From assembly GCA_965644265.1 (NCBI GenBank), contig OZ286463.1, forward strand, positions 81,406,001 to 81,470,000: a stretch of DNA of 64,000 nt. The letters run 5' to 3'. Numbering within the stretch: the stretch's first letter is position 1; each line of letters opens with the position of its first letter. Both the position numbers and the translations under genes were made by a program. Positions 24,683 to 45,900 of the stretch are shown one piece after another. The notes beneath the pieces are model-generated. The model was not told the origin of the DNA. It worked only from the letters and a program-made list of their open reading frames with translations, and did no database searches. This DNA comes from Glycera tridactyla. Its lineage: Eukaryota.

Positions 24683-27600
24683 TGCGGTGGCGGTTCTCTT
24701 GGTGCGAGTCATGAGCGACTTAACCGTTGATTTGTCTTATGTCCGTGTTCCATCACAAGCACAGACATTCATCGAATCGCCGTCATTCGTGCGAGTAATG
24801 CTTTCTGATTGGCTCATTCTACACATACTATCTACAACTTCATTCATAAATCGGCGCAGTGATCCATCAAACCTGGTGATGTGGTGCAAACAAGAAGCAC
24901 TACTTCACACCCCTACAAAGATCATATAAAATGTTTTTTTTCCAGATTTATGCATACAGATAAGACAGACGGATGTCGGGGAATCAATACAGATGATCAT
25001 TCCGACAGTATGTTTAGTATTTCCCCATGGGACCTGGTAATGAGGTGCGAACAAGAGGCACTACTTTTTCGAAGTGGGCGTGGCCAAAGAGCTTGATTTA
25101 CTACTTGTGCGTAGCTATACATCTCTGAGCGATCGTATCTGTGTGCTTCGGTAATCGGCAGCAAAAACGAATGTATGGCGAAATGCCCATTACGTAATCG
25201 CTACATTCCTCAAATTGTCGTTAATCAGATCAATAAATCATCTCAAAATTGTGTTAGATTAGATCATTGGATCCTTTACACAAATCCAATCAAGATTCGT
25301 TTGATTATATCAGCCTCGAGAGACAGGATCGGCGAAGTTAGAAAGCATTTCGAGCAGAGAGGTGGCAGCATAATGATCTCCAATGGAGATCACAACAAGA
25401 GCGCAAACCTGCGCTGAGTGATCTCCGATGAGAATCGGGGAATAGTGACAAGCCCTCCTTCAAGAATTCATGCCGTCATTCATGTCTATTAGGTTTGGAG
25501 CCGGGACTACTTTCACCAAATCGTGTCAAATGATCAAAGCAAATAACAAGTAGCTCTCTCTGTCTGTCTGTCTGTCTCTCTCTTGATTCCTTGACATCCA
25601 TCTGTCTTGCCTCCATGTATAAATCTCGAAAAATCTGTGTTTTGGTTGATATGATATTTCGTAGGGAAGTAAAGTAGTGCTTCTTCTTTTGCACCTCATT
25701 ACCAGAATTCATGGATCAATGCGCCGATTCATGAATGAAGTTGTAGATAGGGTGTGTAAAACCAGCCAATCAGAAATCAGGACTCAAAGTGGGCGTGCCC
25801 AAAGAGCTTGATTGACAGGCATTTACTACCTGTGCGAAGCTGTACATCTCTGAGCGATCATATTTGTGTGCTTCGGTGATCGGCCACAAAAACGAGTGTT
25901 GAGAGAATTTCGTATTACGTAATCCATACATTTCCTCAATTTGTCGTTCATCAGATCAATAAATCATCTCAAAATTGTGTTAGATTAGATCTTTCGATCC
26001 TTTTCCACAGATCCGATCAAGATTCGTTTCATTATATCAGCCTCCAGAGTCAGAATCGGCGAAGTTAGAAAGCATTTCGAGCAGCGAGGTGGCGGCATAA
26101 TGATCTCCAACGGAGATCACAAAAAGGGATAAGTCGAAATGCAGACCTCTTCTCGGAAATTTGTTTCAGGCTTTCCACATTCAATCCGGTCAGTCACTCA
26201 GTCAGTCAATCAGACGTGTCTAACTCTCATTCCGCTGACAACATTTCAGTTGTCACCTCATGTCAAAGTTATCCTAAGATGCCATCGGGAAAACATCAAG
26301 CCAAATTTCTAAGTTCTTACGTGATACCTCGTCAGACAGTCGCTTGTCAGAGTTTTGGGGTGATGGTGGTAGGGATGTTGTTATTTCTGCAGGCGTACTT
26401 TCATACCAGTTCGTTTGTAAATGCATTTGTGTGTGAGGGGATCTGTATAAGTATAGCACTTTTCGTGATGTGATATGTGTTCATACATTATGACATTGGA
26501 ATAAACTGATGTGCTGTGATGTTTGATACTACTGCAGTGAATCTCCAAGTCCGCCCCACGGATTATACTAATCCCACCACTCTGTATCCTCCGTCTTCCT
26601 GTACAACATACTGGCAACTCGAACATGAGAAGAGTGTCATNNNNNNNNNNNNNNNNNNNNNNNNNNNNNNNNNNNNNNNNNNNNNNNNNNNNNNNNNNNN
26701 NNNNNNNNNNNNNNNNNNNNNNNNNNNNNNNNNNNNNNNNNNNNNNNNNNNNNNNNNNNNNNNNNNNNNNNNNNNNNNNNNNNNNNNNNNATTATTATCA
26801 TGGTTACCTCCTAATACCTTCATCTTGGAGTTGTTATTGGCTCTGCTGATAAAACCATAAACTTAGTTTTCCATAGTCCTAGGATTGCTCCAGTAGATCA
26901 GAATGTTCTGCTGATAATCTCCCTCTGATGTGATCGTTTTTCTCTCACATCAATGTTTGAGGTTTGTCAGCTGTTACACGTGGGCCTATGGCCTCACCAG
27001 GCCTGTCGTCCTTTGTTAAGTATAGTTATTAAAACGAAGAACAGAAATACAATGATGATGATGATGAGCTGTCCTGGTCATTTCCAGGATATGATATTCA
27101 TCGACCTTGCTGATGAGAACATTCGCCCTTTCCATGTGTGGCCACGTCCCGTAAGGGGCCCTCTAGGAACCTCGCTGAATTCATTGTTAGCTCATTTTGA
27201 GGCTGTTTTCTCACTAGATGACGTCATCGAGTGGGGTCACTACGTTCGATTGCGTCACTTGACAACGAGAATGTTTCTGTTTGTCTCGGATGAGGGGGCT
27301 GGCTTGACGGCTGATCCGGTCAACCCACATACAGTGTTTCGGCTTCATCCCATCAACAGGGTACGTTCCTGCCACAATTTTTCTGGCATTTCTATTTCTA
27401 TATAATTTTCACACGTCACAATCTGCTGGTACCAGACACGCCAGTTTGAAGTCCTGGTTCAAGTACTGCACTTCACTATGGCTGATTATATGCTATATGT
27501 AGGTCAATGTATATCATAGAATGTTGATGATTTGAATTTCGGCTAATTCTACTCTACTTCTTGTATGGCTCAAGTCACCTTACCATGAAGGTGATGCATA

Positions 27601-30600
27601 CTAGGACGGAATTTCAAGCTCACATAGATTTGGAACAGATGGCATACATAGCCAGAAATGACATATTTGGTGTCTGTATCTCTTCGATGAATTTACCTCC
27701 TCTCTACCCAATAATCAGGGTATCAAGATGGTGATCACTTCCCGATACCAATCGAACAAATAACCAATCTATTAGGGTCATGATGCTACCAATCGATGTC
27801 ATAGCGGTGGGGTTTGATAGCAAAGCCTGTGCTTGCCCTCGTCAGTATTTTCACCAATCAGGGCTTCTAAGGAGTTTCACGAAAAGCTTGAAGACAGTAT
27901 TGTATGTACAGGGCATCAATTATGGAAGAAAAACAAGTTTGAAAACGATGTCTCGTGACTAAAGCTCCGATTTTCGAGCATTTTCGGTGTGTGTAAACTT
28001 ACAGTGGGCATTATATCTGGATTTGCCACTGATTGATTTATGTCCAGGAATATGGTTGGAGTGGTGTCTTGACAGAGCATTTGTCATCACTGTTCAGCGT
28101 CTGGAAAATAACTCATGCTTATAGGATGAGAGCAAATCCAGCTCTCACATTTCAGGGAACACACCACATACATCATACAATCGTATGATACCCTAAGATG
28201 AACCCAATTGAATAGTTACCCAAGGGGCCACCACCATAAACATCTGTCATATTTCTTTTACAGTCATTTGGTGCAATATCTGACGGCAGCTGTTGTCGTC
28301 TAGAGCACGTGCTCACCTCTACTTGGCTCGGTGCGCTTCAATGTAGGTTATTGAGTTTTTATAGTATAATAATTTAATAATTAATGATTCAATTTCTATC
28401 AGACGTTGTTGGAACATCCAGCAGCAATTCATTTTCTATCTATCATTGCATATCAGTAGACATATCTATATTCATATTTATCTCACCATTCGGTATAAGG
28501 TTGGTGTGAGGTCAGTGAAACAGGAACAGTCAGGCGATGTGTTTGTCATTGAATTGTTGGAAGTAGAATATCACTAATTGATTTTTAATTGGCACATCAA
28601 CTAGGATCAATGCAGAACAAATAATATATCTAGTGGAAGAACATATAATACATTGTGACACTTTCAGACGAATCTTTCCATAAATCACCTCTCCCGAAAG
28701 TCACCTGTCTCTGAATGGCACTTTTGACACATCATCCACCAATCACTCTCGATCACATTTGAACACTGTATTCTATCCATGTCCCTCCTTCCCTTCAGCT
28801 GAGAACTATATACGCAATACGATGAAATGGGACCGATCGATCAGAAAAAAGGTGAGACTTTCTCGCTCGATATCAAGGAGATAGTATTACTGTGTGGTAC
28901 ATGTGAGAAAAGAAACCAGAACAATTGGATTGTTACAGTGTGCATGAAGGTCTTTCGGTGATCGGCACCAAAACCAGATTGTATACCTTGTTCAAACTTG
29001 AAATCAGTGATCGTGTTAGTGCACTCGAATAGTAACCTTATATGTACTGTATATGATAGTGCCTGATTTATGTATGTATTGTATCATTTTTGGGCCATTG
29101 ATTTATGTGGTATTGTGGTTTATGGGATTGAAAAGATTTACCAGCTCATCTTCATAATGAATATTTGTGGAGTTTTTTATGAAGCATAATTGAGATGAAC
29201 TGGATTACTTCAGTTACTCATTAGCGTCATGGCAACTAGTCATTGGATGAGTGACCATGATAGTGGTGTGAGGATGTGTATACCAGTAAGGTTGTACCAT
29301 ACAATACACCAATAGTCACAGACGACACAAGTGATCTGGCCCCCACACCGGTGTAGAGCTATAACATGGAAACAGGCACGATCTTCACACCATGAAGACT
29401 GGATGATGGTGTGAGCGCCTATCTGGGATCTGAATACAGTGACGCTATACTGAGTGACTACAAAAACCGGCAACAATGACACCCTTCCCTAGCATACAGT
29501 CACATGTAAGCACTAAACAGGAGGGCTAAAAATGCGATCACAGACAGAGAGGGATGTGCCTTGCTAGGATCAGACCTGTCACCTATGGATAGGTAACAAA
29601 AGCACTGGAAAGAACCTTAAGGGTCTGACAGTGGCACTCGGCTGAGATCAGACAAAACAGTCAACCAAACGAAGAGTAGACCGATAATGCGGTAGCATGG
29701 TAAATATGTAACGCCGGCATATTGTTAGCATGGCCTGTGTTTATCCATGTGTTCACATCAATGACATTGTGGACAAAGCGTTGTCAAATCGACGAAAAGA
29801 TGTATTCGGATTCTATGTGTCCTCACTCTAGACCATATCTCGAAAGTATAAAATTTGGTCCATGGGCAGATACAGAATTTCAGTGAGACGCGAAATGAAA
29901 ATGACACCAAGTGGCAAACCAGCCGACGACCTGAATGGCGGATGTTAAAATGTCATGACATAGAATCCAGGGCTCGCTCCGTAATTGTGGGGAATAAAAG
30001 GCTTTCTTTTATCACGATCACCCCGGAAATGTAGCCCTATTCCGGCATGGCATGGGCTTTGTGTCTAATTTGATGCTTCAAACTTAATCGTGTACAGCCA
30101 GTAATACCCAACAAAGGCATATCACGAACACCTAGTTATCTAGTGATTGTGGAGGAATGATCTTTATTACCGTGTCTTTGATTCGCTCACTTACAGGTGG
30201 GATTTACATCGGGACGGGTGTACCAAGATGCGTTTCGTCTGGATGCAGTCAAACCTCAGTTTGTCATGGACTATAACAGACTCTCGGGACTTTTGCCCTT
30301 TCTTCTCGCTGTTACAAAGCAGGTATGTCCCAGCATTATTATAGCCTTTTGGAGTCAGCATTGTTTATCTGATCTCTGTTATATTTCCTAAGTCGTGATC
30401 ATCGTGATTTCCGATTATCAATCAGGTTTTGAATCATTACTCTGATTGTATATACGTACACCTGATATACGTGTTGTTTATCCCAGCCCCCCCCCCCACG
30501 TCCCGAGTAAAAAGAACGTAAAATAAAATTCAAAGTAAATAATGACAGTTAACCACACTTTTTCGGCGTATATTACCCAATATCCACTCTAGGTATTACC

Positions 30601-32126
30601 TATGTCATACATTCACATGTGTGATCGCTCTAGCTGGTTCGACTGTATTCTTACTCTCAATATTCAATTTTTCAAGGAAATCAGACTTGACGAAGTTGGC
30701 CGCAGGAGAGAGTACGCCATGATGATGAATGGAGTTATCATGGTAAGTATATATATAAGAGAACTCAACTCCCCTAGAACAGTCGACTGGATTTCCACAT
30801 TCATCAATTGAATTGGCCTTTATAGAAAATTTCGGCTTTGTAGACGCAATGCCTCCCGTGGAAAGTATCGTTGCATTCAGCGCTAAGGGCAGGATTGTCT
30901 GAATCTCTTCTGGCTATTTCAATGAAATACGTAAGAGAGAATATTGACATTTTCCTACTCAGTTCTGTTCGGAACATTTTGGAGATCGAATCATTTTCAC
31001 ATTCGAGATACCAATATTCATCAACATTTCGTATCCAAGAAATGCAAATTGGTGAGAGCAATGACCGAACAGTGCCGACTATTACGCCCTCTCCCCAATG
31101 ATGCCACAGCCGAAATGATTCTTAAGTAGCATCACAAAACTGAGCCATTGAATAGTACCAATGATATGATTGGCGACTGTCGTTACAAATATAACCAGAT
31201 CCTTACATAATTACTCATAACAGATGAACATGCATCATGCTTCAGGCATTGGGTGAGATTGAGCAGTTCGTGAAGGAAGAGGTAGAGGCACATCGGAATC
31301 GGAGGCGACTTCTGCGTGAAATGATGGTATGTGAACATTCCACAATTGATACCTATCTCGTGAGTTTTATCTGCGGTTCTGTATATAACCCCTCGCGTGA
31401 TCACGTGGCACGGCTTTTCATCACTGAAACAAGTTTTGAGGGGTTGGTAAGGTTGGTCGAGAGGCATGATCCACGTGGTCGCAGGTGGATGTTGCCGACC
31501 ATGAGTGAAGGGCCCGGGGCTCAAACCCCAGTCCATCACAGGTGTTAGAGCTGACTACCTCCAAAGTGTTTTGGTGTCCAAGCCGACCAGATATTGTTAG
31601 CAGATGCCATCTGGTGAACACAATGAACACCCATACTGCTATCACCCATCCATTGGCAATGTCAGACATGAACCACACGCCGGGAAAAAAACCCTCACGT
31701 CATGGAAATTGATCAGTGGATATTGCAGTTTTTCATTACTCTACTCCAANNNNNNNNNNNNNNNNNNNNNNNNNNNNNNNNNNNNNNNNNNNNNNNNNNN
31801 NNNNNNNNNNNNNNNNNNNNNNNNNNNNNNNNNNNNNNNNNNNNNNNNNNNNNNNNNNNNNNNNNNNNNNNNNNNNNNNNNNNNNNNNNNNNNNNNNNNN
31901 NNNNNNCTACTGCTACTACTATTGATACAATCTCTACCACCACTACCAACCCAGAACACAGACACGACCACCATTACACTGAACCTACTTCTATTACTAC
32001 TACCGCCACCACTAATACTACTACCGTTGCAATTACTAGTAATGCTGTTACAGTGCCTGCTGCTACTGCTGTTACTACATCCACTATAACATACTCCACC
32101 ACGACATGTCCGCAACAATAAAATCA

Positions 32127-32165
<39 letters not shown>

Positions 32166-35100
32166 CACTGCCATAGTGGCTACTGCTGATGTGAGTGCTG
32201 TTATTGCTCTTGTTATTGCGACTGCTGCACTCTGATGACACTCATATTACTTGCAAGGTACTGGAGTTACTGATGGAGCTTATGAAGACACTGACTAGCT
32301 GGGCATCTGGCGATAACAAGAAGCATATATATCGCTGCATCCACGAGATCTTCTACACTTGCATCGAAAACGGAGAGCTCAGCGATTCAATCTACTTCAT
32401 ACAGTTTCTTGAGACCTTCCTCTCTCAACTCTACACCACCGTAAGTTCATACTCATAATCACACCGTTACTCATTAGTTTCAGTTTCCGTTCGGTTGGGT
32501 GCTCTTCCATTCATCCAGTTGGTGAATCAACAGTAATGATGATACAGTCTACCTTGCGGCCGTCCACTGAGCAGCCACCTTCTTTGCGTGGCCACTCAAA
32601 AATTGTGACCCGAGGGTTCTCGCATATAATTCACCTATCCTGGGCAGCCATTTTTGTCCTTCTCGAAGGTGACTGCTAAGAAAAAGCTGGACCATAATTG
32701 AATAGAATCAGGGAATGTAGCACAAATTGACAAGAATAAAGGCTGCGTCAATTTCCAGCATCAGTAATATAGAATGGAGGTCGCAATGCGGTCACTGGAT
32801 GACAGCTCATAGGGCTGGGAATATGGAACGATAGGTATGAGAACATCCGTGGTGATTAAAACCATGAGAACATCTGTCTGAGGGGCCAAGAACCAATAGA
32901 ACAATCACAACTGTGGCTCTATGTGCGAAGAACTCAGAAATAGGAATGAGAACGTCCTTCGTAAGTGAGACCCAGGCAAACGACTTTTTTGTGGGCTCAC
33001 GAGCTAATCGATTATTCACAGTTATTTGTCATCCAAGTGAATCCAATGAGGATGTTTTGGCCAAGGTGCACTAATTTAATCTTTCCTCTTCTACAGAGGG
33101 GTCATGATTTGCTGGTGACGCGCATGCTCATAGCTCTGGTTAGTGACCGGAAGCAGGTGATTGAAACTCTCAACATGGCTCATATCGATTCGTTTGTCAC
33201 TCTGCTCANNNNNNNNNNNNNNNNNNNNNNNNNNNNNNNNNNNNNNNNNNNNNNNNNNNNNNNNNNNNNNNNNNNNNNNNNNNNNNNNNNNNNNNNNNNN
33301 NNNNNNNNNNNNNNNNNNNNNNNNNNNNNNNNNNNNNNNNNNNNNNNNNNNNNNNNNNNNNNNNNNNNNNNNNNNNNNNNNNNNNNNNNNNNNNNNNNNN
33401 NNNNNNNNNNNNNNNNNNNNNNNNNNNNNNNNNNNNNNNNNNNNNNNNNNNNNNNNNNNNNNNNNNNNNNNNNNNNNNNNNNNNNNNNNNNNNNNNNNNN
33501 NNNNNNNNNNNNNNNNNNNNNNNNNNNNNNNNNNNNNNNNNNNNNNNNNNNNNNNNNNNNNNNNNNNNNNNNNNNNNNNNNNNNNNNNNNNNNNNNNNNN
33601 NNNNNNNNNNNNNNNNNNNNNNNNNNNNNNNNNNNNNNNNNNNNNNNNNNNNNNNNNTCTATATGCTCCTTATCATCTTCAGCAGCAGCATCAGCAGCGG
33701 CAGCGTCAGCAGCGGCAGCCTACTCGTCGTTGTCAATGCCATTAAGGTTGTCGTTGTCACCATCGTGGTATTATAGAGCTCGTCGTCATGGTGGCTGTCA
33801 TCGCTGTCTCCTGATTCTCATGGAAACAATTCATCCCAGGGNNNNNNNNNNNNNNNNNNNNNNNNNNNNNNNNNNNNNNNNNNNNNNNNNNNNNNNNNNN
33901 NNNNNNNNNNNNNNNNNNNNNNNNNNNNNNNNNNNNNNNNNNNNNNNNNNNNNNNNNNNNNNNNNNNNNNNNNNNNNNNNNATTTGAACGGAATGCGCAA
34001 CACGTGCGGTTCAATGAAGTACCCTGAAGATTCTCTCATCTGAAAATGTGGCAAAAACAAAACGTCCAAATGTAGCAAATTTCGACCATTAGGTTACGAT
34101 GGCCAGTACTTATGACAAGTAAAACACAATGGGAAACAGATTTGTTGTTTCAAAGTGGATAATAGAAAAATTGACCATTCTTGATATCACTAAAAATATT
34201 GATCGAGTTCTTACCATCGATTCAGATTTAATGCATTCGTTCAATAATTACAATAGAAGTCACGATATAATTTCAGTTCGCCCTCACGCTATCAAATAAT
34301 GGCGTGAATGGATATAAATGTGGAAATGCATTCTAACCTATTTCAGCATCATCGCTTCCTGCAGCTGCTGGGCACATTGTGTGTTTGTGATGGAACTGCA
34401 ATGGTGACTATCCAGAATCGGATTTGCGAGAGGTTGATCTCGGATGAACATGTGAGTTACATTATCCATTCTGAAAGAACACTATGAGCAACCACACGAT
34501 GTGCCCCCTGTTTTACTATGCATCAGCAAGCTCAAGGAGAGAAGTATGCCGATGATACAGCAATCTATTTGAAAGAAGATGACCAAAACAATCTAGAACT
34601 ACAACTACAACTTAGATCAGTGGATACTGAAATGAAATTAACGTAGAATTCTGATTAAATGATTGGATGCTATTCAGGATTCATCCATGAATTTCGGGAT
34701 GAGAGAAGGGCAACTGGAGACAGTTATTTTGGAGCCTGGTCATATCAGGCATCACAATATATTCTGGATGTGGATCGTAAAATCTTTTGATGTGATATTT
34801 TTTCCACAGCATCATCTGTTCCGCTTTGGTCTGCGACACGGTGTAGTCGTCGTAATAGATGGTTCCAGTAAGACAGAAACGCCTATAGCTGACTTCATCG
34901 ACGTAAGTGGAATAGGTGATGAAACCTAATCTTCATACAATGGTCTTTCAACTTCTGTATGTATTTTAGAATAGCTTCATTAGTAATGTGGTATTGTAGC
35001 CACAGCCCAGCCACAGCCCAGCCAATGAAAGGAACCCTGGTATTTAAGGGCATCCAGGCAAGGATCGAGTTCAAAAATAGCATGAGTGCCTTCAAGGCAT

Positions 35101-38100
35101 TCATACAATACAGTTGGATGCTATGTCTGGCACAGTGTTTACTTTGTGACATCGTTTTCGGATGCATCATTATTGAGTTCGAACATACGATTAAGGATTT
35201 AGCTGCTGTAGATATGTTAATTGACCATGGTACAAGTAAAAGTTGTCAAAGGGTCGCAATCATCCATTCATATCATGCATCACTTCATTTCACTTCATTT
35301 ATATATACCATATCATCATGTATCGTATTCTATGTTTTTTCTGTGTATTGTTCGTAATCCTGAAAACGAATGTTTCATTTCTTCCAATTGTACTAACGAA
35401 AGAAAATAAAGAGTTGAAAGCAAAAATGTGTGTGTATGTGGGGGGGGGGGGGGGCTAAGATAACAAACCTATCTTCCCCAATCATATGTATACAATAATG
35501 ATTATATATTGATAAATATATAGAGACGCTTCAATGACAACTGGGATGAATGAAATATTGCATCTGGTCGATATCCTATTGGGGCTGATACTTTTCATCC
35601 AACTGATTGGAATGTTTGTAGAAATCATGGGCTGGTTACTGTGATGAGGATTGCCACTACCTGAAGCAGCAACTTGTGCTCCTATACAGACTATGTCAGG
35701 TTAGTTCTTCTACACTTCAATACCACACACACATCTACCTGAACATGCAGGCATGCGTACAAACACNNNNNNNNNNNNNNNNNNNNNNNNNNNNNNNNNN
35801 NNNNNNNNNNNNNNNNNNNNNNNNNNNNNNNNNNNNNNNNNNNNNNNNNNNNNNNNNNNNNNNNNNNNNNNNNNNNNNNNNNNNNNNNNNNNNNNNNNNN
35901 NNNNNNNNNNNNNNNNNNNNNNNNNNNNNNNNNNNNNNTATTGGGCCATCATTTCGGATGCTTCATCGTTGTTTTGGGAAAATGACCAAATCCGCGTCGC
36001 TGTTGATAATGATATTCACTGTCGATATGGATGTGATTGGATTATTCCATAACCGTATGTACCATATAATGTACCCTCTTTCGGGCACAGCTGAAATGTC
36101 ATGCATAGTATCCAATTCTCCATCATCTGGACATGTTTGTGATTTCAACATTTCGATAAGCCATTGCTAACATACTGTGTGGGTTCATGAGTTCACTTAT
36201 GCTTGATTAGATGAAATGAGATCAGTATCTTTGTTTCATCGAATTTTTTAGAGTATATATGGAAGCTCGTATGAAAACATGCATGCACACGCGATCAAAC
36301 GCACTACAAATCACACATGCACACCAATGATCTATTCACACATGCATGCACAAAACACACATACAAATTCAGGGTCCACACCTATTGGCGCCATCCCTGA
36401 ATTCAGATATGGCCCTATTGAACCAGACCAAGGAAAGGCTATTCAGCATCCAAAATTCAAAATGATACGTACCTTATGGGCTCTGTTTGGTTCTAACAGA
36501 CGGAATAGCGATGGAATAAGAGACCAGTCACTCCGTGTCATTCCCACTCAATACGTAAAATCAGATCCTGAGCCTTGTATTTGTCCTCGTTGTAGGGCCG
36601 CAATCATTTTTGCATGGACCACATCATCCAGAACACATTGTCATGGGATATAATCGTTGGCGTCCTGAAATCAGAAGCAAATATCAGCGATCATTTTCGG
36701 GCTGCTTTTACTGATCTCATGCTTGGTGAGCAACCTGACCATCACAAGTCTCTGGGCTGATGATTCAAGTCTATGAAAATGTGGTATTTTGTTTCTCTTT
36801 CATAATCTTCTGTTGAATCTGGTGTGCCAGCCTATTCTTCGGCATTTAGGTAGGACTGGATTACGTGATCCACTTGCATCCACACCATACCCTATCCTCT
36901 ACTTGTCTTTCATCTATAGCTTCAACTTTCTCTCTAATCATGGACAGCGCTACTATTTCAAAGCGTTGGGTGAGGCAGGTGACAGAGAAGGCAGGCGAAA
37001 GGGCGGAGGGATAAGAAGAAAAAAGGGAGAACCATGATCAGAAGGAATAGGGCTGGGTCGAAGAATATGGGATGGAAACCGAGACAGAAGATAATGAGGA
37101 GAAGGTAGAGCAGGGAGAGGAGAGGAGGAGGGGACGGAGTGGAACAGGAGGGCTGGAGATAGATGGGGAGTATGATTGGAAAAGGGGGCGGATTAGGCGA
37201 GGACATAAAAGAAGCGGAAGGGGAAGAATTGGGTTAGAGAGAAAGAGACTGAAGAGAACACCTTGATGATACCAGAGAGTTGGTTTATATTTGCCCAACA
37301 TCAGATGGAATATATTCTTTTTGGGTCCAGATGAGTATAGATAGAAACAATAACATTCGTGATACATCTCTCACTCCTCATCTGTCCGACATGTAGTGGT
37401 AACCTAGTAGGATCCAGAACCAGATCCTTGTCCATAAGGCATAACCTGGTTTCAAGTCTCCGAAAAGATAAGCACGATTTCATGGGTCTCTCGTTCTACC
37501 TAATGACTTTCTAAGAAAGCCCGAACATGGCATTCTCGTTGATTTGAAACACCCGACATGTCCATATCTCGGCCTTGAGTACGCTACTTTGAAATCAACA
37601 TTGTTGCCAGAATATTTGCATTATCGCCCACAGGACATCTACCACAATTAGTCCCGCAATGAGAAACCACTGTATCGGGCTACCAGCTGCTTCAAGAACC
37701 ACTTGAGTATATCACACTGTACCTTACCTGTAATATACAACCAAATATATCAAGCAGTCACTTCCTGCAGCCTCCAACGTGGTCTTATGTTGTGTTGACT
37801 GTACATTTGATCATTGCAGGTTATAGGGATCAATATCCGCCGTTTTGATTAAGACTGGTGGAAATAACGTATCTGAATACGACCTTTGTTCCAGTTCTTT
37901 TCATCGATGCTGGAAAAAATACCTCAATTTACCGATCCAGCGCATACAGTACCTTCGAATACAGTCAGCTGTCGCCTCATACAGATAAAGACATGTGGTA
38001 TCACCGTAACATCATACATGTAACTACTCATCCTCAATTTTGGCCCCATCATCCATTCACATCTTTCGCATCTGGTTATTTGTACGCTCTTGAAACACCA

Positions 38101-39029
38101 TCAAAGCTAACATCCCACTCGAAAGGCTACCCTCACAAGGCCGGTTTGCCGATTAGTATTGTAATTGGTTATTGTATAACTAGTCCGAGTTGATCGCTTC
38201 GTCTAGGGTGTTGGACGAATCACTGACAATCACTTATATCAAGTACACCTATGGGATCTTTTGTGAAATGGATAACAAGCGTCTGCCATCTATCTAGCCC
38301 CTATAAGTACAATCTCCAATGTAGTTATAGCATCCAGAGCCCCGTAAATACTTGAAATCGTTGTTCTTGTTCATACATGTGATCCCCCAACCTTTGGTGA
38401 GATTCCTCGAGTGGCATACCTCACATGCAACTCAGCCTATGAGCATCAATGGATATCGACCGATGATGCTAGTCCACAATCTAACAGCTGGACAACCAAC
38501 CAGACCCCCAGCCTTACCTATGTTAATTTCTTCCCGAATACGTGTTCCTTTAGGTGGATCCCGTCCTTCAGCAACGTATTGAAACATTCAAACCGTGGAT
38601 TCTCGAGTTTCTCGAGAACAACACCGAAATGGTTGCTTCTAACACACAGCGAAACGCCTTCATCAATTCGGTGAGTGAGATCGTACCGCCAAAATGCAAG
38701 AACGTATCTTAGTGATCCTTTCAGTGCGAAATGTATCCACTTCTCCCGATGCGGAATAGCCAGGCATTAAGCTCAATAGGATAATTGCATACTGTGTATC
38801 ACGGCCGATCGTTATCATCATNNNNNNNNNNNNNNNNNNNNNNNNNNNNNNNNNNNNNNNNNNNNNNNNNNNNNNNNNNNNNNNNNNNNNNNNNNNNNNN
38901 NNNNNNNNNNNNNNNNNNNNNNNNNNNNNNNNNNNNNNNNNNNNNNNNNNNNNNNNNNNNNNNNNNNNNNNNNNNNAGCATCAGCGGCAGTAGCACAGCG
39001 GCAGCGTTGGCACCTCCATCACTACCCTC

Positions 39030-39075
<46 letters not shown>

Positions 39076-42000
39076 TCAATACGATCCTATAACCTTCGAA
39101 TCCTAATGCTCGGAAGGATGTTGTTGCTGCAGGTTATCCGTGTAGTGTGCCATCTGGTGGAATATGGTTACTTGGTGCCGAGTGAAATGATGAGGCTGCA
39201 TAACATTTTCATGGATCTGCTAGATGGCACCACAGACCTGCCATTCGCCGTCCACCATACGACAACGAGATTCTTTAGTGAGTATAGCAAACAAACCAGC
39301 CAGGTGACTGTTGTTACCTAGTCATTTTGGTTTTAGCTGATTTCTAGTTCAATCTCATTGTGACTAACAGTCATTGTCTCTGTACTCAGTTACCGTACAT
39401 ATGTCCCAATTTTGTGTGACTCTTCTATTCCCAACAAAAAAGCAAATAAAGATGGATTTGTAAATCCCAAGTCACCACAAGCCATCAACATCGAATTTGT
39501 ACTCAGCCGGTGAACTGTTGCTCCATTTCCCTTGATGACTTGGGAAGAGCAGTCCAGACCATGTGGACTCTTTGTACCAATTGCTTTACGCAATTGCGTG
39601 AACGTTTACCAAACTAGAGCTATTGAAATTTAGCATAATGATTACCCAGGTGTGGCATGGATGCAGGGTGGCGGTTGGGTGCCATTGGTTTCTGGGAATG
39701 TTCAAAAAGTCAAAGTTCGAATAAAGACTAGCGACTTTCAATGGCAGTGAATGCGAACCAATACAGCACAGTTCAATGTTTGTTCTCTGGACACTGTCCA
39801 TGGAGGGCACCACGGTCTCTTCTAATGTCGACTATGTAGATGGTAGTGGCTTGTTGATAAAAAAGATTCAGAAGCAGAACGGGCCAATAAGGACGTATTT
39901 CAGTGATGTGAGATATTTTGTTATACATCAAACCTGAAATCGATCAAATGTCTCACTGACCCGTGAAACCCTTCCTACCATACAGGTTCTCCAATCAGAT
40001 GCATTGAAGAATACCGTAGAGTTGACCGATTTCTGAAGTCGGAAGAGACGGACATCATTGTTGCAGCCAAATGCCAGTAAGTAATCATCATGGAAAGCAC
40101 CTCAGAAATACGATATTTGTCGACAGTGCATGAGTGAGCATTTTCCGAGCTCTGCTGCCAGGCTTGAGTGTCAGTTTCCAGCTAGTCAACGTTTGTTATG
40201 CCAACAATCGATTCGTCAAATATTTCTTCGACCTGTAGAAGACAGGGACATACGTCAGGGACATACGTCGTACATAAACCCAGGGAGTAAGAATATAATG
40301 TAATGTGTCTTGGAACACAGGAGGAAAATGATATGGATTAGTATGAATTTCAAAGATATATGACCTATCCAGTAGCAAAGTCGGGTCTCACAAGATTTGG
40401 TCTAGATTCAATAATGCGCACTCTCTATATGGAATATTTTCAGGAGGAATAATTCCACGTTTTCTATAACTACTTGATCCACTGGCGATCCATTAAGGCT
40501 TTTTGACGCTTCATAATCGTTATTCAGAGAATGCATAATCACACATCTCCCTTCCCCACCTTGTATAGATACAAATACATCATTAGCCTATTTAACATTC
40601 ACTGCTTATCATGAATGTACACACATAAGAACATCCATCCGTCACGTGAATACTTTCTCTGCCACGATATTGTAACCATAGCTACGCAATACTACTAAGG
40701 TATGGTATATACTCCATTAGCCAAATTATTTAAATACAAAGTTGCAACATATAATCGACTATCGGTACTATTGTGCTGATGTTGAAAGAGCAGCAACAGC
40801 AGTGATTGTAGATCAAGATTCATGACATCACGCACGGCTAATGACGCACGGAGATAGGCATGCTAGTAGTGTCCTCAGAAGCAGGAGTTCCACTACTATC
40901 GCTTTTCTGCAGGGCATTTGCCATCCTCATTGAAAAGACACGATAGGTGCTCTTTTCTACAGTTCGATGATTTGAAATTGTACGTATGTGGGAAATACAA
41001 TGATACATTCGTGTTGATTACCAGCTCCACATGCAGTTGAGAGGGGGGGGGGGGGGGGGCTGCTAGTCGACATGTACAATCATGATATCATTTTGCAATT
41101 GAAGGGTCTGAGTCCGGTCTGCTAACAATGCTACATTATCTCTTATATATCTATATATCAGCCCATTCCCTAGACAGATTGACCTATAGTACACATCAAC
41201 AGGGTTTGTTCCTCAATTCTAGAAATTGGATGCTGCCCTTAAACATACTTCCTCTTATCTATTCATCAAAGGGAATCCGATTTTGTGTTACGCGATATGA
41301 CATGGGTCTGAATGGCTGCCAATTTTGATATTTTCTATAGGGCGATGGAATTTCTAGGCTACTCGCAAGATGTCATGATGAACTTCATCGGAGAGGTGAG
41401 CGAACTACTCAACATCATCGCTTGATCTCCACATATTTTGGTGTCGAGAATTGACACTTGGCGGAGCCCATCCCAGTGTGAGCTAGTAAACACCGGTTTA
41501 AACTCACGAACCGGCATGAGCCGGTTCCGCCGGTTCGTACCGGGAGTAAATCAAGATTTGATAAACTAAGAAATTTTATTGATGAATATTAAGAAAGGGG
41601 AATCTTATTGTAGGTATATATTTCATGAAGATTTTTCCAACAGCTGGTAATACAGCAGGGGTAAACAAGCACTCTTTCCCTGTCCAACTGAACCAGTAGA
41701 TACACCATATCTGACGAGGGAACCTAGTGAGAACCCATCCATTCCCATTGCACAGGAGTCTCTATATTGCCGGAATGGTGCTGATGAGGCCGAGAAAAAT
41801 TTATTGCCTCACCATTCAACATCGGACGTGCCTCGAATCTTGAGTGCTTCCTTGTTACTATTCAGAGAAGCGATATCTCCAGAGTCAGTCGCTTTGCTGC
41901 GATGACGTATCGATCTCGTCAGATGTTTGTACCTCGTATGTTAGAAAGTATGTAACCTCGTCTGTCGCGCTGAACATGTAAATAAAGATATGTTATGTTA

Positions 42001-42915
42001 TGTTATGTTATGTTATGTGAGACGTCACTGAACCTCATCAGAATTGAATGTGAGATTGGTTAGTTGGTTGTGCTTTGACGTCACGTCAGCTCCATTAGTG
42101 CTATATTGTGACGCGCAAGGAATGGGCCTGGGTGAGTTCATTTAGGACAACTCCTTCTGGGTCGCCAATAGAAGAAGAACATATATCAAATTCACTGTGC
42201 TTTTTTGCTTTGTAGCAAATATGTGCCAAATTCAAAGAAGTGAACGAAGGCACAGAAAGTGGATTCCTCTACAGACTGGAATCTCCGATGTTTAACGTCC
42301 TCGAAAAGATGACATGCAGAAGGTAAACTGTTGAATGATTCAAATTATACTTCATCGTTCCCTGTAAAATGATTCATCATTATCTCAGTGTATGTTGCAT
42401 TACTTTATGACTACTGTGATTGATTCCGGCAGCCTGATGCCATGGAATTTTTGAACAAACACTAACCTTTCCCGACAATACGTAGCTCAAACATATCCTC
42501 CCTAATTATGGATTGCTTCTAGTCATTTCTGCCCTGAATACTTTTAATACGCCCTTTACAATGTGCCATCTACTAATAACTCCAAAGCAGACTTGGCGTT
42601 TGTATGAAAAGTCTGTTCCCAATCCGTTCGATGTTTCCCAGACTTCGATGTTTTCTCCGACTCGATTTGGGATATATGAGATAGTTCAGGGTCAGATATG
42701 ACCACATGTCTGTACATGCTATCCCCACACTACGTACGTACCGTATTGCTACATCACAGTGATGTATTTCTGTTCAGTTGCAGCCTGTTCAAGAGTCCAA
42801 CAAGAGTGCGCTATCTTGTGAATCATCTGATCAAAATAGTGTTTTCGAGCAAATCGGATACAACCATCTCTGTTCTAAAGGTGATTATTGCGATCATCAT
42901 TGATTACAAATGTTT

Positions 42916-42947
<32 letters not shown>

Positions 42948-45900
42948 GTCAAACAGACGCACGGACGGGTGGATGGACAGGCAGACAGATAGACAAACCG
43001 ATAGATCGACAGACAGGCAGACATACATACAGGCATACAAGTGGACANNNNNNNNNNNNNNNNNNNNNNNNNNNNNNNNNNNNNNNNNNNNNNNNNNNNN
43101 NNNNNNNNNNNNNNNNNNNNNNNNNNNNNNNNNNNNNNNNNNNNNNNNNNNNNNNNNNNNNNNNNNNNNNNNNNNNNNNNNNNNNNNNNGGATCAATTGT
43201 TGGACTGAGGAATGAATGAATGGGTGGATGTATGGATGAATGAAAGGATGGATGGATAGACAGATGGGTGGATGGCTGCATGATGCATGCATAGATGTAC
43301 GGGTGCATGGATGAAGTGATGGATGCAGGGAGTTTCAGCTCTACGGATAGACGAACACATTAGTCGGTGGGAGGGTTGGTCATTATCCCATTAGGTATCC
43401 AATCTCGAGGTATTAACCGACAAATGAATGTATCAATGGGTAGACGTATGAATGTTGTGGAGCGCCATCACCGATGAGATATCGTCTTGAGAAGAGTTGT
43501 CTGTTGCAGGACCTGACGCGATACGAATATGACTTCATGACGTCACACTCACTCATCCTCATACATAATCTTCTCAACATCAAACCAGAACTTGTCAATC
43601 TGCTGAAGAATTCACAGGTAAGGGGGGTCAGTAGTGTTTGTGTGATACATTTTCAATGCAAGTCTGAGCTTTGGCATTTACTACATTTCGAGGTCCCCTG
43701 TTCCCTGTTAACAAGAGAGGTATGTGTGGTGTGTGGGGATGGGGAATATTTGTTTGTTCGTTTAAGTTTAACGTCTTTTCAACCTTCTTGGTTCATGTCT
43801 GACCGGAAGACTAAAAATGCTGAAGAAGAGAACCACTACTGCCGGGGGCTGTCCTCACTCTTTGTGAAGAACAGCAGTGGTTCTTTCACGTGCATACGGG
43901 AAAAGTCTCCATATGCACCGTCAGCCATTGATCTTCCAGTCGGCATGCACTGGATTCTCACTTGGTCGCCTCTTACGACACATAGGGATACGCGGGGGCC
44001 CTATTCTTGTTCATTGGCATGACGAAGGTTCCAAAAACCTCACGGGGATGGGGAATATCAGAACATGCGTTTCCTGTTTACAGCTGTTGTTGACTCCAGC
44101 GTCGACGAAGATGTACCGCGATATCAGGACATACATGCCCCAGCTTCGACGTCTCCTCAACGTACAGCTGACACCAGACCAATACAGCACCATCTCACAC
44201 ATCCTCGACGCCTTCAAAGAGTGAGTTCATCAAGAGTTTAGAGCGGATGTGTACATATGCCTGCACAGATTTGTATAACATACAGGCCATATGCTATTGC
44301 TTCACAACCTCAACTTTAAGTTTTCGCTATGACATCAAAATCTTTTGCCATTAAATCCATCGTATCCTTCGAAGTGGTAGCATATTTACATCACATCCGG
44401 AAGTGAAAAAGCTGTGGCTGCAACTAGCCATTAGATGAATGGCAACGTGAGAGGCATGAGGATGGCTAGCCTGTATGAAGTGGACACATGATTGATTCCA
44501 GATCAAAATTATATCACAAGGCTGCCCCCAAGGTACTGAAAATATCAAATGAGGCATGATCCTTTTGGATCTGAAAATATTGATCGGTGGTACGACTATT
44601 AGGAGTGACAAAAACAGTCACAATAGTACCCTTCTTCGACATACACATGCAGGCATAAGAGAGTAAGGTCCAATTCAATCACAGATGTAGGGTTGGGTCC
44701 TATCAAGATTAAACCTCTCACACAGAGAGAACCATATCAGCAGCGTCGGGAGACCAGAAACACTCTGACATTGCCACCTGGCTAAACCTCATCAATAGAA
44801 TAATTCGAATAGGTTTGTTTTGTTTTATAACATTGTCTTTATTCGTACTAAGCAGTTAGATACAGTATAGTATTCTTCTTCACTTAGAAGAAAACGTATA
44901 TACAAATATTCAAATACGATTCAATGATAATGAGATGATAATATACAAAATGTATGATCTGATGATGAGAGGAATGAGATGAGAAGATGATTTCTCCATA
45001 CCTCATTAGCATATATGGTTATGTATTTGTTGTGTCTATGGATTTCAGTTCTTCCAAGAATATTTTGAAAGGGGCAAGATCCATACCCCCCCCGTCTCAA
45101 GATACTTACTAATAAACAGATTGCACCCTTTGGCAGCTCAGTGTCTGAAACTCTTTTCTGTGATCGAACAACTTCAGTTTATTCACCTTGAGCAAAGCAC
45201 GCGAAGCAGAGCGAGTAGGGAGGCAATGCTCTATTGTGTCATATTGACAAATGGGTTTAGAGGTGAAATTTCCACTCAAAGATTTTTAACAAAAATGAGA
45301 TCGTGTTCTCTTCTTCTACCTGACAACCTTCGAACCCTTAGTTCATTATGCATCAAGTCATTGCTATATCTTTTCGGTGTGTACTTCAGAAGTCTGATAT
45401 GCTGAGCTGTGCACTTGAATGAAGTTCGAAACAAAACCAACCAGAGGGTGACGTTTAACGTCTGATCCGGTGATATGTTATACAACCAAGACCCCGCAGC
45501 GTGTGTTGCCTTGGTGTTACTTCTGAAACTCTATAAAATGTGTTGTCAATTCTCGTGAGATACTACCAATCCATAATGCGACAGATTGTCCTTGATCTCT
45601 CAAACCTATCTATCGGAATCCATCAGAATTACTCAAATAATGTGGTAAGGTCTTCCAAGCTGTGGGTGCATTTGTAGTCTCCGGGGATAGCCCTTCATCA
45701 TATTTTGTCAGAATTCTATAGATGAGTCGCTCATTGTTGTGCTATATATGGACACTTCGGAACTAAGAATGGATCACTGCTCTGCATTTACAGTTGCTGT
45801 CGACTTCCGTTCGATATGAGCCGGCCGCATGCACTAGGGCAGAACATTCTACGTAACGAAGGACTGATACCCTTGCTTGTCTCCATTGTTAACAGGAGCC

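What the first reader, a model, noticed from the sequence alone, without database searches (positions are those of the whole stretch)
26538..32440. IP3-receptor-family channel whose IP3-binding core appears degenerate: candidate IP3-independent Ca2+ release channel
Seen: exon 10 encodes [10 protein letters not shown], exon 16 [10 protein letters not shown] and exon 17 [15 protein letters not shown]. Known: in mouse ITPR1, IP3 is coordinated by R265, T267 and R269 (VFLRTTGRQ), R504, K508 and R511 (NRERQKLMRE), and Y567, R568 and K569 (QDYRKNQEY). Inferred from by-eye alignment: R265 becomes Q, R269 becomes T and the YRK triad becomes roughly GEL, so the beta-trefoil side and the 567-569 motif are lost, while the R504/K508(R)/R511 cluster is kept. 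The whole protein is far more diverged from canonical ITPRs than animal orthologues usually are. That points to a separate, little-studied paralogous lineage of intracellular Ca2+ channel with an unknown or absent ligand.
Basis: partly seen in the sequence, partly recalled or inferred. Interest (0 to 1): 0.78.

Follow-up and report, generated by a model that had tools for sequence, protein, structure and literature searches.

The report
Fast-evolving IP3RB-type calcium channel paralogue
This annelid gene belongs to the already described IP3RB branch of calcium-release channels that vertebrates lack, and it has lost part, but probably not all, of the positively charged pocket that normally holds the messenger IP3.

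Summary
The quoted peptides are at the stated places. They lie in a + strand gene whose exons I placed from about 18.75 kb to 63.06 kb. The pore-forming end lies outside the window. Neither assembly gap breaks the frame: exon 10 runs into the first gap, hiding about 3-4 codons and its donor site, and the second gap is intronic.

The protein is not a canonical ITPR (19.6% identity). It is a very long-branched member (30-35% identity) of a family found from sponges to hemichordates. This family matches the published IP3RB subfamily, so the "separate lineage" is already known.

The family keeps a nearly invariant basic pocket:
- R265, K/R504, R506, K508, R511, R568 and K569 (IP3R1 numbering).

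The window protein:
- keeps the 504-511 cluster;
- has uniquely lost Y567/R568/K569/N570, which read E-L-S-D;
- has lost R241 (now Q);
- lacks R269, as does the whole family.

The alpha half of the binding core is the most eroded domain (43% of family-invariant positions kept, p=0.0015).

Verdict: partly supported. This is a new, divergent member of a known kind. Loss of IP3 binding is plausible but unproven, and no RNA run was listed.

The parts
18751..18849 (+). Exon 1 (from the second in-frame ATG; an upstream ATG at about 18697 is also possible). It encodes the start of the suppressor domain, [18 protein letters not shown].
   Evidence: HMM hit at positions 3-42; splice model.
20136..24455 (+). 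Exons 2-9: 20136-20199, 20762-20860, 21209-21345, 21955-22032, 22357-22437, 23093-23190, 23828-23918 and 24368-24455. They encode the suppressor domain and the first strands of the beta-trefoil. The codon at 24383-24385 is Gln at the R241 position.
   Evidence: GT-AG junctions chosen by HMM score. The frame closes over the whole piece. R241 column posterior is 1.0.
26538..26640 (+). Exon 10, cut at its 3' end by the assembly gap. It reads [34 protein letters not shown]. Key codons are Gln 26546-26548, Arg 26552-26554, and Thr 26576-26578 in place of a family-invariant Lys/Arg.
26641..26790 (.). Assembly gap hiding the last 3-4 codons or so of exon 10 and its donor site. It was not filled.
   Evidence: HMM coordinates run 302 then 306 across it. 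A stop at 26926-26928 in the exon 11 frame shows an intron follows.
27218..31326 (+). Exons 11-16: 27218-27360, 28264-28342, 28799-28851, 30197-30322, 30677-30742 and 31246-31326. They encode the rest of the beta-trefoil and the first helices of the alpha domain. The basic cluster is R 31294-96, R 31300-02, R 31306-08 and R 31315-17, matching R504, R506, K508 and R511.
31750..31906 (.). Assembly gap inside intron 16. No exon is missing here.
   Evidence: HMM coordinates are contiguous between exon 16 and exon 17. No second exon-17-like ORF was found in the sequenced part of the introns.
32258..32440 (+). Exon 17. Codons 32375-32386 read E-L-S-D where canonical receptors have Y567-R568-K569-N570 and the family has S-R-K-N.
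   Evidence: posterior 0.97-0.998.
33097..34451 (+). Exon 18 (33097-33208, running into the gap at 33209-33657) and exon 19 (34347-34451). They encode the end of the binding core and the first RIH domain.
   Evidence: Pfam RYDR_ITPR at 1.1e-07 on 34308-34484.
36596..63062 (+). Downstream exons, colinear with family-HMM positions 697-1985. Those with clear junctions are 39133-39281, 39999-40076, 44084-44220, 45794-45920, 46692-46853, 47150-47388, 48909-49137, 56729-56826, 57756-57915, 58496-58593, 60211-60325, 60869-61018, 62588-62689 and 62988-63062. They cover the second RIH domain, RIH_assoc and the Ca2+-sensor region. The gene runs on past the window.
   Evidence: Pfam RIH_assoc at 1.3e-09 and RIH.

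Best explanation
The window holds roughly the first two thirds of a gene for an annelid member of the IP3RB subfamily of IP3R/RyR-type intracellular Ca2+-release channels. It is a lineage-specific, very fast-evolving paralogue.

Its N-terminal ligand-binding core has the IP3R fold but has been partly dismantled:
- The helix motif that grips phosphate 1 and helps grip phosphates 4 and 5 of IP3 (Y567/R568/K569, plus N570) is replaced by E-L-S-D.
- R241 is Gln.
- Two further family-invariant basic or polar residues on the trefoil side are gone.
- The alpha half of the core is the most eroded domain of the protein.

The R504/R506/K508/R511 cluster is kept, and so, most likely, is the R265 equivalent.

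Inferred, not shown: the protein no longer binds IP3 with the canonical affinity and selectivity. The two Ca2+-sensor acidic residues are kept (one as Asp). It would therefore work either as a Ca2+-regulated release channel or as a ligand-poor subunit that tunes hetero-tetramers formed with the other IP3R paralogues of the same animal.
For: Superfamily and fold:
- Pfam MIR, RIH (twice) and RIH_assoc hit exons.
- An exon chain is colinear with a 2611-position family HMM from position 3 to 1985.
- All 19 N-terminal exons have GT-AG junctions, consistent frames and no stops.

Family placement:
- Identity is 30-35% to family members and 19.6% to vertebrate ITPR over 1097 columns.
- The gene sits inside the lophotrochozoan clade of the family. 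It is sister to Dimorphilus DgyrCDS6999 (SH-aLRT 97). Without that sequence it falls among annelid sequences.
- Its terminal branch is 2.4-2.9 against a median of 0.25.
- The family N-terminus folds with pLDDT 87.5. Its best structural matches are IP3R3 and IP3R1 (E 2e-38, TM 0.72-0.76), ahead of RyR. The family profile hits IP3R1 at 5.8e-89 and RyR2 at 2e-40.

Pocket:
- Family counts are R568 114/121, K569 120/121, N570 120/121, K504 121/121, K508 121/121 and R511 120/121. The window protein reads L, S, D, R, R, R.
- Alignment posteriors at these columns are at least 0.97.
- Kept family-invariant columns by domain: suppressor domain 77%, beta half 68%, alpha half 43%, central region 61%, later regions 65-75%. 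Fisher test for the alpha half against the rest gives p=0.0015.

Ca2+ sensor: LCDGKH (Glu to Asp) and NEITVGNPEN (Glu kept).

Literature: IP3RB is a bilaterian subfamily lost in vertebrates, fly and nematode, and is functionally uncharacterised (PMC7992859). Capsaspora IP3R-B could not bind IP3 (PMC9113742 citing Alzayady 2015).
Against: - No binding or expression data exist. No RNA run was listed.
- The pore and transmembrane part lies outside the window, so 'channel' is an inference from homology.
- Under the better-supported register the three residues classically held critical (R265, K508, R511) are all basic. R504 and R506 are kept too, and an extra Arg sits at position 507. A weaker or altered inositol-phosphate site is therefore not excluded.
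- The strand register at R265 is unsettled: hhalign and MAFFT disagree with HMMER. DSSP strand ends in the two AlphaFold models do not decide it.
- No orthologue was found, so purifying selection could not be measured.
- The pairing with the Dimorphilus sequence joins two long branches.
Confidence: 0.5

Rival explanations
1. The pocket still works. The protein binds IP3, or another inositol phosphate or phosphoinositide head group, with changed affinity or selectivity. It uses the retained R265-equivalent, R504, R506, R508 and R511 plus the extra Arg at 507, and remains a ligand-gated channel.
For: Profile-profile alignment puts the Arg at 26552-26554 on R265 with posterior 0.88. The 504-511 cluster is fully basic. 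From established knowledge of mouse IP3R1 mutagenesis (recalled, not checked here), R265, K508 and R511 are the residues whose single loss abolishes binding. R568 mainly sets selectivity among inositol phosphates.
Against: R568, K569, Y567 and N570 are all replaced, one of them by an acidic residue. R241 is Gln. A family-invariant Lys/Arg in the trefoil loop is Thr. The alpha half of the core is the most eroded domain, at 43%. No other family member of about 121 tolerates loss of K569 or N570 together with R568.
Confidence: 0.3
2. The gene is a decaying or silent duplicate. Its long branch and eroded binding core would reflect relaxed selection on the way to a pseudogene.
For: It has the longest terminal branch in the family. 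It keeps the fewest family-invariant positions, 63%. No close orthologue was found in any database searched. No RNA run was listed.
Against: The 33 exons with defined junctions carry no stop or frameshift and have canonical GT-AG junctions. Erosion is uneven across domains: the suppressor domain keeps 77% and the HMM 1597-1703 region 75%, against 43% for the alpha half. Uniform decay would not predict this. The Ca2+-sensor residues are kept.
Confidence: 0.12
3. It is the animal's canonical ITPR (IP3RA) orthologue that simply evolved fast.
For: Automatic annotation calls all relatives 'inositol 1,4,5-trisphosphate receptor type 1/2/3-like'.
Against: Identity is 19.6% to vertebrate ITPR against 30-35% to the IP3RB-type family. 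The family including this gene is separated from ITPR by a branch with 100% support. The gene shares family-only features, such as LEAYLCAEG and the longer trefoil loop. Annelids are reported to have separate IP3RA genes (PMC7992859).
Confidence: 0.02

Closest known systems
IP3RB subfamily of IP3 receptors (Alzayady et al. 2015 Mol Biol Evol; leech hve-ip3rb2 in Heath-Heckman et al. 2021, PMC7992859)
   Same: Same domain order (suppressor domain, beta-trefoil, armadillo core, RIH, RIH, RIH_assoc). The gene groups with the Lottia, Capitella, Saccoglossus and Trichoplax proteins, which come from species that paper lists in its IP3R tree or (Trichoplax) that I recall from the 2015 study. It is absent from vertebrates and is an annelid gene. 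Function is uncharacterised.
   Different: It is much more diverged than any other member (branch 2.4-2.9 against a median of 0.25). It is the only one lacking the family-invariant R568/K569/N570. The alpha half of its binding core keeps only 43% of invariant positions.
Capsaspora owczarzaki CO.IP3R-B
   Same: An IP3R-like protein reported not to bind IP3 (as cited in PMC9113742). It is the precedent for an IP3-insensitive IP3R homologue.
   Different: Metazoan IP3RB proteins as a group keep most IP3-contact residues, so the loss in this gene is an independent, recent event.
Dimorphilus gyrociliatus DgyrCDS6999 (P0145)
   Same: It is the nearest relative in both trees (SH-like 99, SH-aLRT 97). 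It is an annelid sequence and is also long-branched.
   Different: Identity is only about 33%. It keeps H-x-R-x-R, K-x-R-x-K-x-x-R and S-K-K-N, that is, an intact basic pocket.
Canonical IP3 receptors ITPR1-3 (IP3RA; structures 1N4K, 3UJ0, 5XA0, 6DQJ and others)
   Same: Same fold of the N-terminal 700 residues. This was shown for the family model, not for this protein itself (Foldseek E 2e-38, TM about 0.75). The R504/R506/K508/R511 cluster and the Ca2+-sensor residues are retained.
   Different: Identity is about 20%. T266, G268, R269, Y567, R568 and K569 are not conserved. It also lacks the long insertion before the 504 helix.
Ryanodine receptors
   Same: Same superfamily. RyRs are ligand-pocket-free, Ca2+-gated release channels, which is the working model proposed here.
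   Different: No sign of the RyR-size architecture: the exon chain is colinear with a protein model of about 2,600 residues. The family profile and fold match IP3R clearly better than RyR.

Membership tests
IP3R/RyR superfamily | MIR/beta-trefoil, two RIH domains and an RIH_assoc domain, in that order | tested here: met
   Pfam hits on exons: MIR, RYDR_ITPR 1.1e-07 and 0.047, RIH_assoc 1.3e-09. The exon chain is colinear with the family HMM.
IP3R/RyR superfamily | C-terminal six-helix pore domain (Ion_trans) with selectivity filter | not testable with these tools
   The gene runs off the window at HMM position about 1985 of 2611. The rest of the genome could not be read.
IP3RB subfamily | Falls in the clade of non-vertebrate IP3R-like proteins, apart from IP3RA (canonical ITPR) | tested here: met
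   A 100%-supported branch separates the family plus this gene from vertebrate ITPR. Identity is 30-35% against 19.6%. Caveats: no invertebrate IP3RA, no RyR and no Capsaspora sequence was in the tree. The clade is equated with published IP3RB on shared species, plus the Trichoplax record recalled from the 2015 study (PMC7992859).
IP3RB subfamily | Family-invariant basic pocket: H-x-R-x-R, loop K/R, K-x-R-x-K-x-x-R, S-R-K-N | tested here: not met
   The window protein reads N-x-Q-x-R, T, R-x-R-x-R-x-x-R and E-L-S-D. Of the nine basic positions five stay basic. This feature was defined here from 125 sequences and is not a published criterion.
Canonical IP3 receptor (IP3RA / ITPR) | IP3-contact residues R265, T266, T267, G268, R269, R504, K508, R511, Y567, R568, K569 | tested here: not met
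   Kept or conservatively replaced: R504, K508 (as R), R511, and probably R265 and T267 (register posterior 0.88). Lost: T266, G268, R269, Y567, R568, K569.
Canonical IP3 receptor (IP3RA / ITPR) | Binds IP3 and releases Ca2+ in response | not testable with these tools
   This needs a binding assay and a functional assay.
Ryanodine receptor | Protein of about 5,000 residues with SPRY and RyR-repeat insertions after the N-terminal domains | tested here: not met
   Exons are colinear with the IP3R-like model of about 2,600 positions, with no extra conserved blocks. The family profile scores IP3R1 at 5.8e-89 and RyR2 at 2e-40. The fold match is better to IP3R. SPRY was not searched for exon by exon.

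The most novel reading that the evidence does not exclude
A naturally ligand-blind subunit has arisen inside a channel family whose IP3-type basic pocket is otherwise nearly invariant from sponges to hemichordates. It would act as a purely Ca2+-gated release channel. Alternatively, because IP3R tetramers in mammals need ligand on every subunit, it would act as a built-in brake or tuner when it co-assembles with the animal's other IP3R paralogues.
Probability: 0.3. Interest if true: 0.55.

Novelty: new member of a known kind. Interest (0 to 1): 0.35.

Why it matters
IP3RB channels are present in most animal phyla but missing from vertebrates, flies and nematodes, so almost nothing is known about what opens them.

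Two results here bear on that:
- Across about 120 IP3RB sequences the IP3-type basic pocket is nearly invariant. This argues that typical metazoan IP3RBs still bind a phosphorylated ligand, unlike the Capsaspora protein.
- This annelid paralogue is a natural exception with part of that pocket removed. Tested beside a typical paralogue from the same animal, it would show what the pocket is for.

On its own it is one more fast-evolving duplicate in a family that is heavily expanded in lophotrochozoans.

Tried and rejected
- Single exons against the PDB gave only chance hits. Single exons against Pfam were mostly too short.
- The one whole-library search had to use a 50-residue exon. It found no relative above 54% identity, and only one full-length protein, which served as the entry point.
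- A search with exon 17 alone for fragmentary relatives found no candidate.
- I tried to add window exons to a full-length relative in one alignment, to draw search words from them. MAFFT scattered the fragments, so this was abandoned.
- A third search, seeded with the nearest relative, found sponge and further lophotrochozoan members but no closer orthologue and no protein of this genome.
- No RNA run was listed.
- I tried to settle the R265 register from DSSP strand ends in two AlphaFold models. Both registers are one residue off, so this is undecided.
- Fold search gives no residue-level superposition.
The window protein itself was therefore not modelled.
- A full-length MAFFT alignment for the tree timed out. 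It was replaced by hmmalign to the family HMM.
- The Alzayady 2015 paper is not held. Its content is quoted only through papers that cite it and from memory.


Full report
**What is in the sequence.** Exon 10 begins at 26538, after a CAG acceptor, and reads (V)[33 protein letters not shown] up to the assembly gap. Exon 16 (31246-31326) ends in [14 protein letters not shown]. Exon 17 (32258-32440) contains [15 protein letters not shown].

Pfam recognises MIR, RIH (twice) and RIH_assoc on single exons. This places the gene in the IP3R/RyR superfamily.

**Gene model.** A 50-residue RIH_assoc exon served as the query for the whole-library search. It found one full-length relative, a Pomacea protein. 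Searching with that protein gave 120 relatives.

I built a 2611-position HMM from 40 of them. It picks out a colinear chain of + strand exons from 18766 to 63062, covering HMM positions 3 to 1985. The pore-forming C-terminus therefore lies beyond the window.

For the first 19 exons I chose junctions by HMM score among all frame-compatible GT-AG pairs. Nearly all have good consensus sites. The frames close over each gap-free piece and there are no stops. Fourteen further downstream exons have equally clear junctions.

**The assembly gaps (the test asked for first).**
- Exon 10 is open right up to 26640. On the far side of the gap, the frame of exon 11 carries a stop at 26926-26928, and a strong acceptor sits at 27218. 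An intron therefore lies between the two exons.
- Family-HMM coordinates run 302 on the near side and 306 on the far side. About 3-4 codons and the donor site of exon 10 are hidden, and the two sides agree in order, strand and frame.
- The gap at 31750-31906 lies inside intron 16. Exon 16 ends and exon 17 begins at adjoining HMM positions, so nothing coding is missing.
- Exon 18 also runs into a gap, at 33209.

**Which family.** All 120 non-vertebrate relatives are only 21-25% identical to a rodent ITPR3. The window protein is 30-35% identical to them and 19.6% identical to vertebrate ITPRs over 1097 aligned columns.

In a FastTree of 82 sequences and an IQ-TREE (LG+C20) of 40, the family plus the window gene is split from vertebrate ITPR by a fully supported branch. 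The window gene sits inside the lophotrochozoan clade, as sister to Dimorphilus DgyrCDS6999 (support 99 and 97). With that long-branched sequence removed it falls among the Owenia, Dimorphilus and Capitella sequences.

Its terminal branch, 2.4-2.9 changes per site, is about ten times the median and is the longest in the family. Earlier notes of this scan call the genome an annelid, which fits.

The family includes sponge, placozoan, acoel, hemichordate, brachiopod, nemertean, mollusc and annelid proteins. They include proteins from Lottia, Capitella and Saccoglossus, species named in the published IP3R tree, and a Trichoplax record that I recall from the 2015 study.

The leech paper PMC7992859 states that the bilaterian ancestor had IP3RA, IP3RB and RyR. 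It adds that IP3RB was lost in vertebrates and is absent from Drosophila and C. elegans, that it is understudied, and that leeches have two IP3RA and two IP3RB genes. PMC9113742 summarises Alzayady 2015 as showing that IP3R-B could not bind IP3.

The "separate, little-studied lineage" is therefore real but already described.

**Fold.** An AlphaFold model of a typical family member (Owenia, residues 1-700) has pLDDT 87.5. Its best solved-structure matches are IP3R3 and IP3R1 (Foldseek E 2e-38, TM 0.72-0.76). RyRs come second (E about 1e-28, TM about 0.62). The family profile hits IP3R1 chains at 5.8e-89 and RyR2 at 2e-40.

**The pocket, family level.** I aligned 125 family sequences to the HMM and also aligned them with MAFFT L-INS-i. 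The residues matching canonical IP3 contacts are almost invariant:

| IP3R1 position | Family residue | Count |
|---|---|---|
| R504 | K | 121/121 |
| R506 | R | 114/121 |
| K508 | K | 121/121 |
| R511 | R | 120/121 |
| R568 | R | 114/121 |
| K569 | K | 120/121 (plus one R) |
| N570 | N | 120/121 |

On the trefoil strand the family has an invariant H-x-R-x-R, followed by an invariant Lys/Arg in the loop. Y567 is Ser, and R269, T266 and G268 are not conserved. Typical metazoan IP3RBs thus keep about seven of the eleven classical contacts. This is a family-wide observation worth recording in its own right.

**The pocket, this gene.** The window protein reads as follows.

| IP3R1 position | Window residue | Window coordinates |
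|---|---|---|
| R241 | Q | 24383-24385 |
| R504, R506, K508, R511 | R, R, R, R | 31294-31317 |
| Y567, R568, K569, N570 | E, L, S, D | 32375-32386 |
| trefoil strand (family H-x-R-x-R) | N-x-Q-x-R | 26540-26554 |
| loop Lys/Arg | T | 26576-26578 |

Profile-profile posteriors for the alpha-domain columns and for R241 are 0.97-1.0, so these assignments are firm. No other family sequence lacks R568, K569 and N570 together.

**The R265 question.** The family has two arginines two residues apart, and the window protein keeps only the second. Which of the two matches R265 depends on a two-residue register.
- HMMER against mouse IP3R1 puts the first Arg (Gln in the window) on R265, with posterior about 0.7. 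It flips for other canonical sequences.
- MAFFT in three separate alignments puts the second Arg (kept, nt 26552-26554) on R265.
- hhalign against vertebrate sequences alone agrees with MAFFT, but weakly (posterior 0.33-0.49).
- hhalign against a canonical profile broadened with Fonticula and three non-vertebrate canonical-type sequences agrees clearly (0.84-0.88). The family-invariant Asp then falls on the Asp that those sequences carry at position 268.
- Strand ends in AlphaFold models of both families are one residue off under either register and do not decide.

I put the second register at roughly two to one. It is not met for 269 or 568.

**Is the erosion specific?** Across columns that at least 90% of the family share, the window protein keeps 63%. 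That is the lowest value in the family; the next lowest are 72% and 74%.

| Region | Family-invariant columns kept |
|---|---|
| Suppressor domain | 77% |
| Beta half of the binding core | 68% |
| Alpha half of the binding core | 43% |
| Central region | 61% |
| HMM 1597-1703 | 75% |
| RIH_assoc / Ca2+-sensor region | 65% |

The alpha half differs from the other three N-terminal regions (suppressor, beta half, central) with Fisher p=0.0015. Its 43% is below even what a vertebrate ITPR keeps there (47%). The erosion is therefore concentrated where the ligand binds.

The two acidic Ca2+-sensor residues are recognisable by the LCE(N/G)HN and TEYxQGPC motifs. This mapping is from my own knowledge of RyR1 and IP3R3. 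They read LCDGKH and NEITVGNPEN, that is, Asp and Glu.

**What it most likely does.**
- Shown: the gene is an IP3RB-type paralogue, intact over at least 33 exons, with a partly dismantled ligand pocket.
- Inferred: canonical, selective IP3 binding is weakened or lost. Gating would then rest on Ca2+, or the protein would serve as a ligand-poor partner in mixed tetramers.

The main rival is that the remaining basic residues still bind IP3 or another inositol phosphate. That cluster is R265-equivalent, R504, R506, an extra Arg at 507, R508 and R511. A silent, decaying duplicate is a minor rival. Intact frames and uneven erosion argue against it, but no RNA run was listed and no orthologue was found for a selection test.

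**Limits.**
- The spliced protein could not be passed to the fold or library tools, so the window protein itself was not modelled.
- No invertebrate IP3RA, RyR or Capsaspora sequence was in the trees.
- The Alzayady paper could not be read.
- The channel part of the gene was not seen.

**Verdict.** This is a new, unusually diverged member of a known subfamily. It is of moderate interest, mainly as a natural contrast for finding out what the conserved IP3RB pocket binds.

Noticed in passing
P0047-P0177 (family proteins): Across about 120 IP3RB-type proteins, from sponges (Oscarella, Corticium) to hemichordates, the residues matching R265, R504, R506, K508, R511, R568, K569 and N570 are nearly invariant. 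This sits uneasily with the shorthand that 'IP3R-B cannot bind IP3', which rests on the Capsaspora protein.
   Followed up: partly
P0142 (Lamellibrachia satsuma): A second annelid family member has lost both trefoil-strand arginines (VHLHVL) but keeps R-R-R-N at 567-570. This is the opposite pattern to the window gene.
   Followed up: no
window 9404-9769 (+): An exon of a secretin/adhesion-type 7TM receptor (Pfam 7tm_2, 1.7e-07) lies upstream of the channel gene on the same strand.
   Followed up: partly
Rfam finds nothing in the whole window at gathering score, and nothing in 54200-54700 at E up to 1.
   Followed up: partly
window 26641, 33209 and other gaps: Two of the twelve N runs begin inside coding exons (exon 10 and exon 18), so the gene model loses a few codons at each. 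The run at 20919-21153 lies in intron 3.
   Followed up: partly
window 31907-32240: Intron 16 carries a long TAC/TGC-rich simple repeat directly after the gap. Several other introns hold (GA)n, (CTGT)n or (GTC)n-type arrays (for example 10215-10770, 21370-21690, 24540-24730).
   Followed up: no
P0182, P0185, P0186 (Logan, JGI and ENA assemblies): Three unnamed proteins carry a canonical-type VFLRSTDR...YRKNQ pocket with Asp at position 268. They are probably non-vertebrate IP3RA proteins. They were useful for settling the alignment register.
   Followed up: partly
same genome, about 62 Mb upstream (note s1-312406): Another window of this genome is noted as holding a 'divergent, non-canonical IP3 receptor paralog'. 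The animal therefore has at least two such genes, and a ryanodine receptor as well (s1-314052).
   Followed up: no
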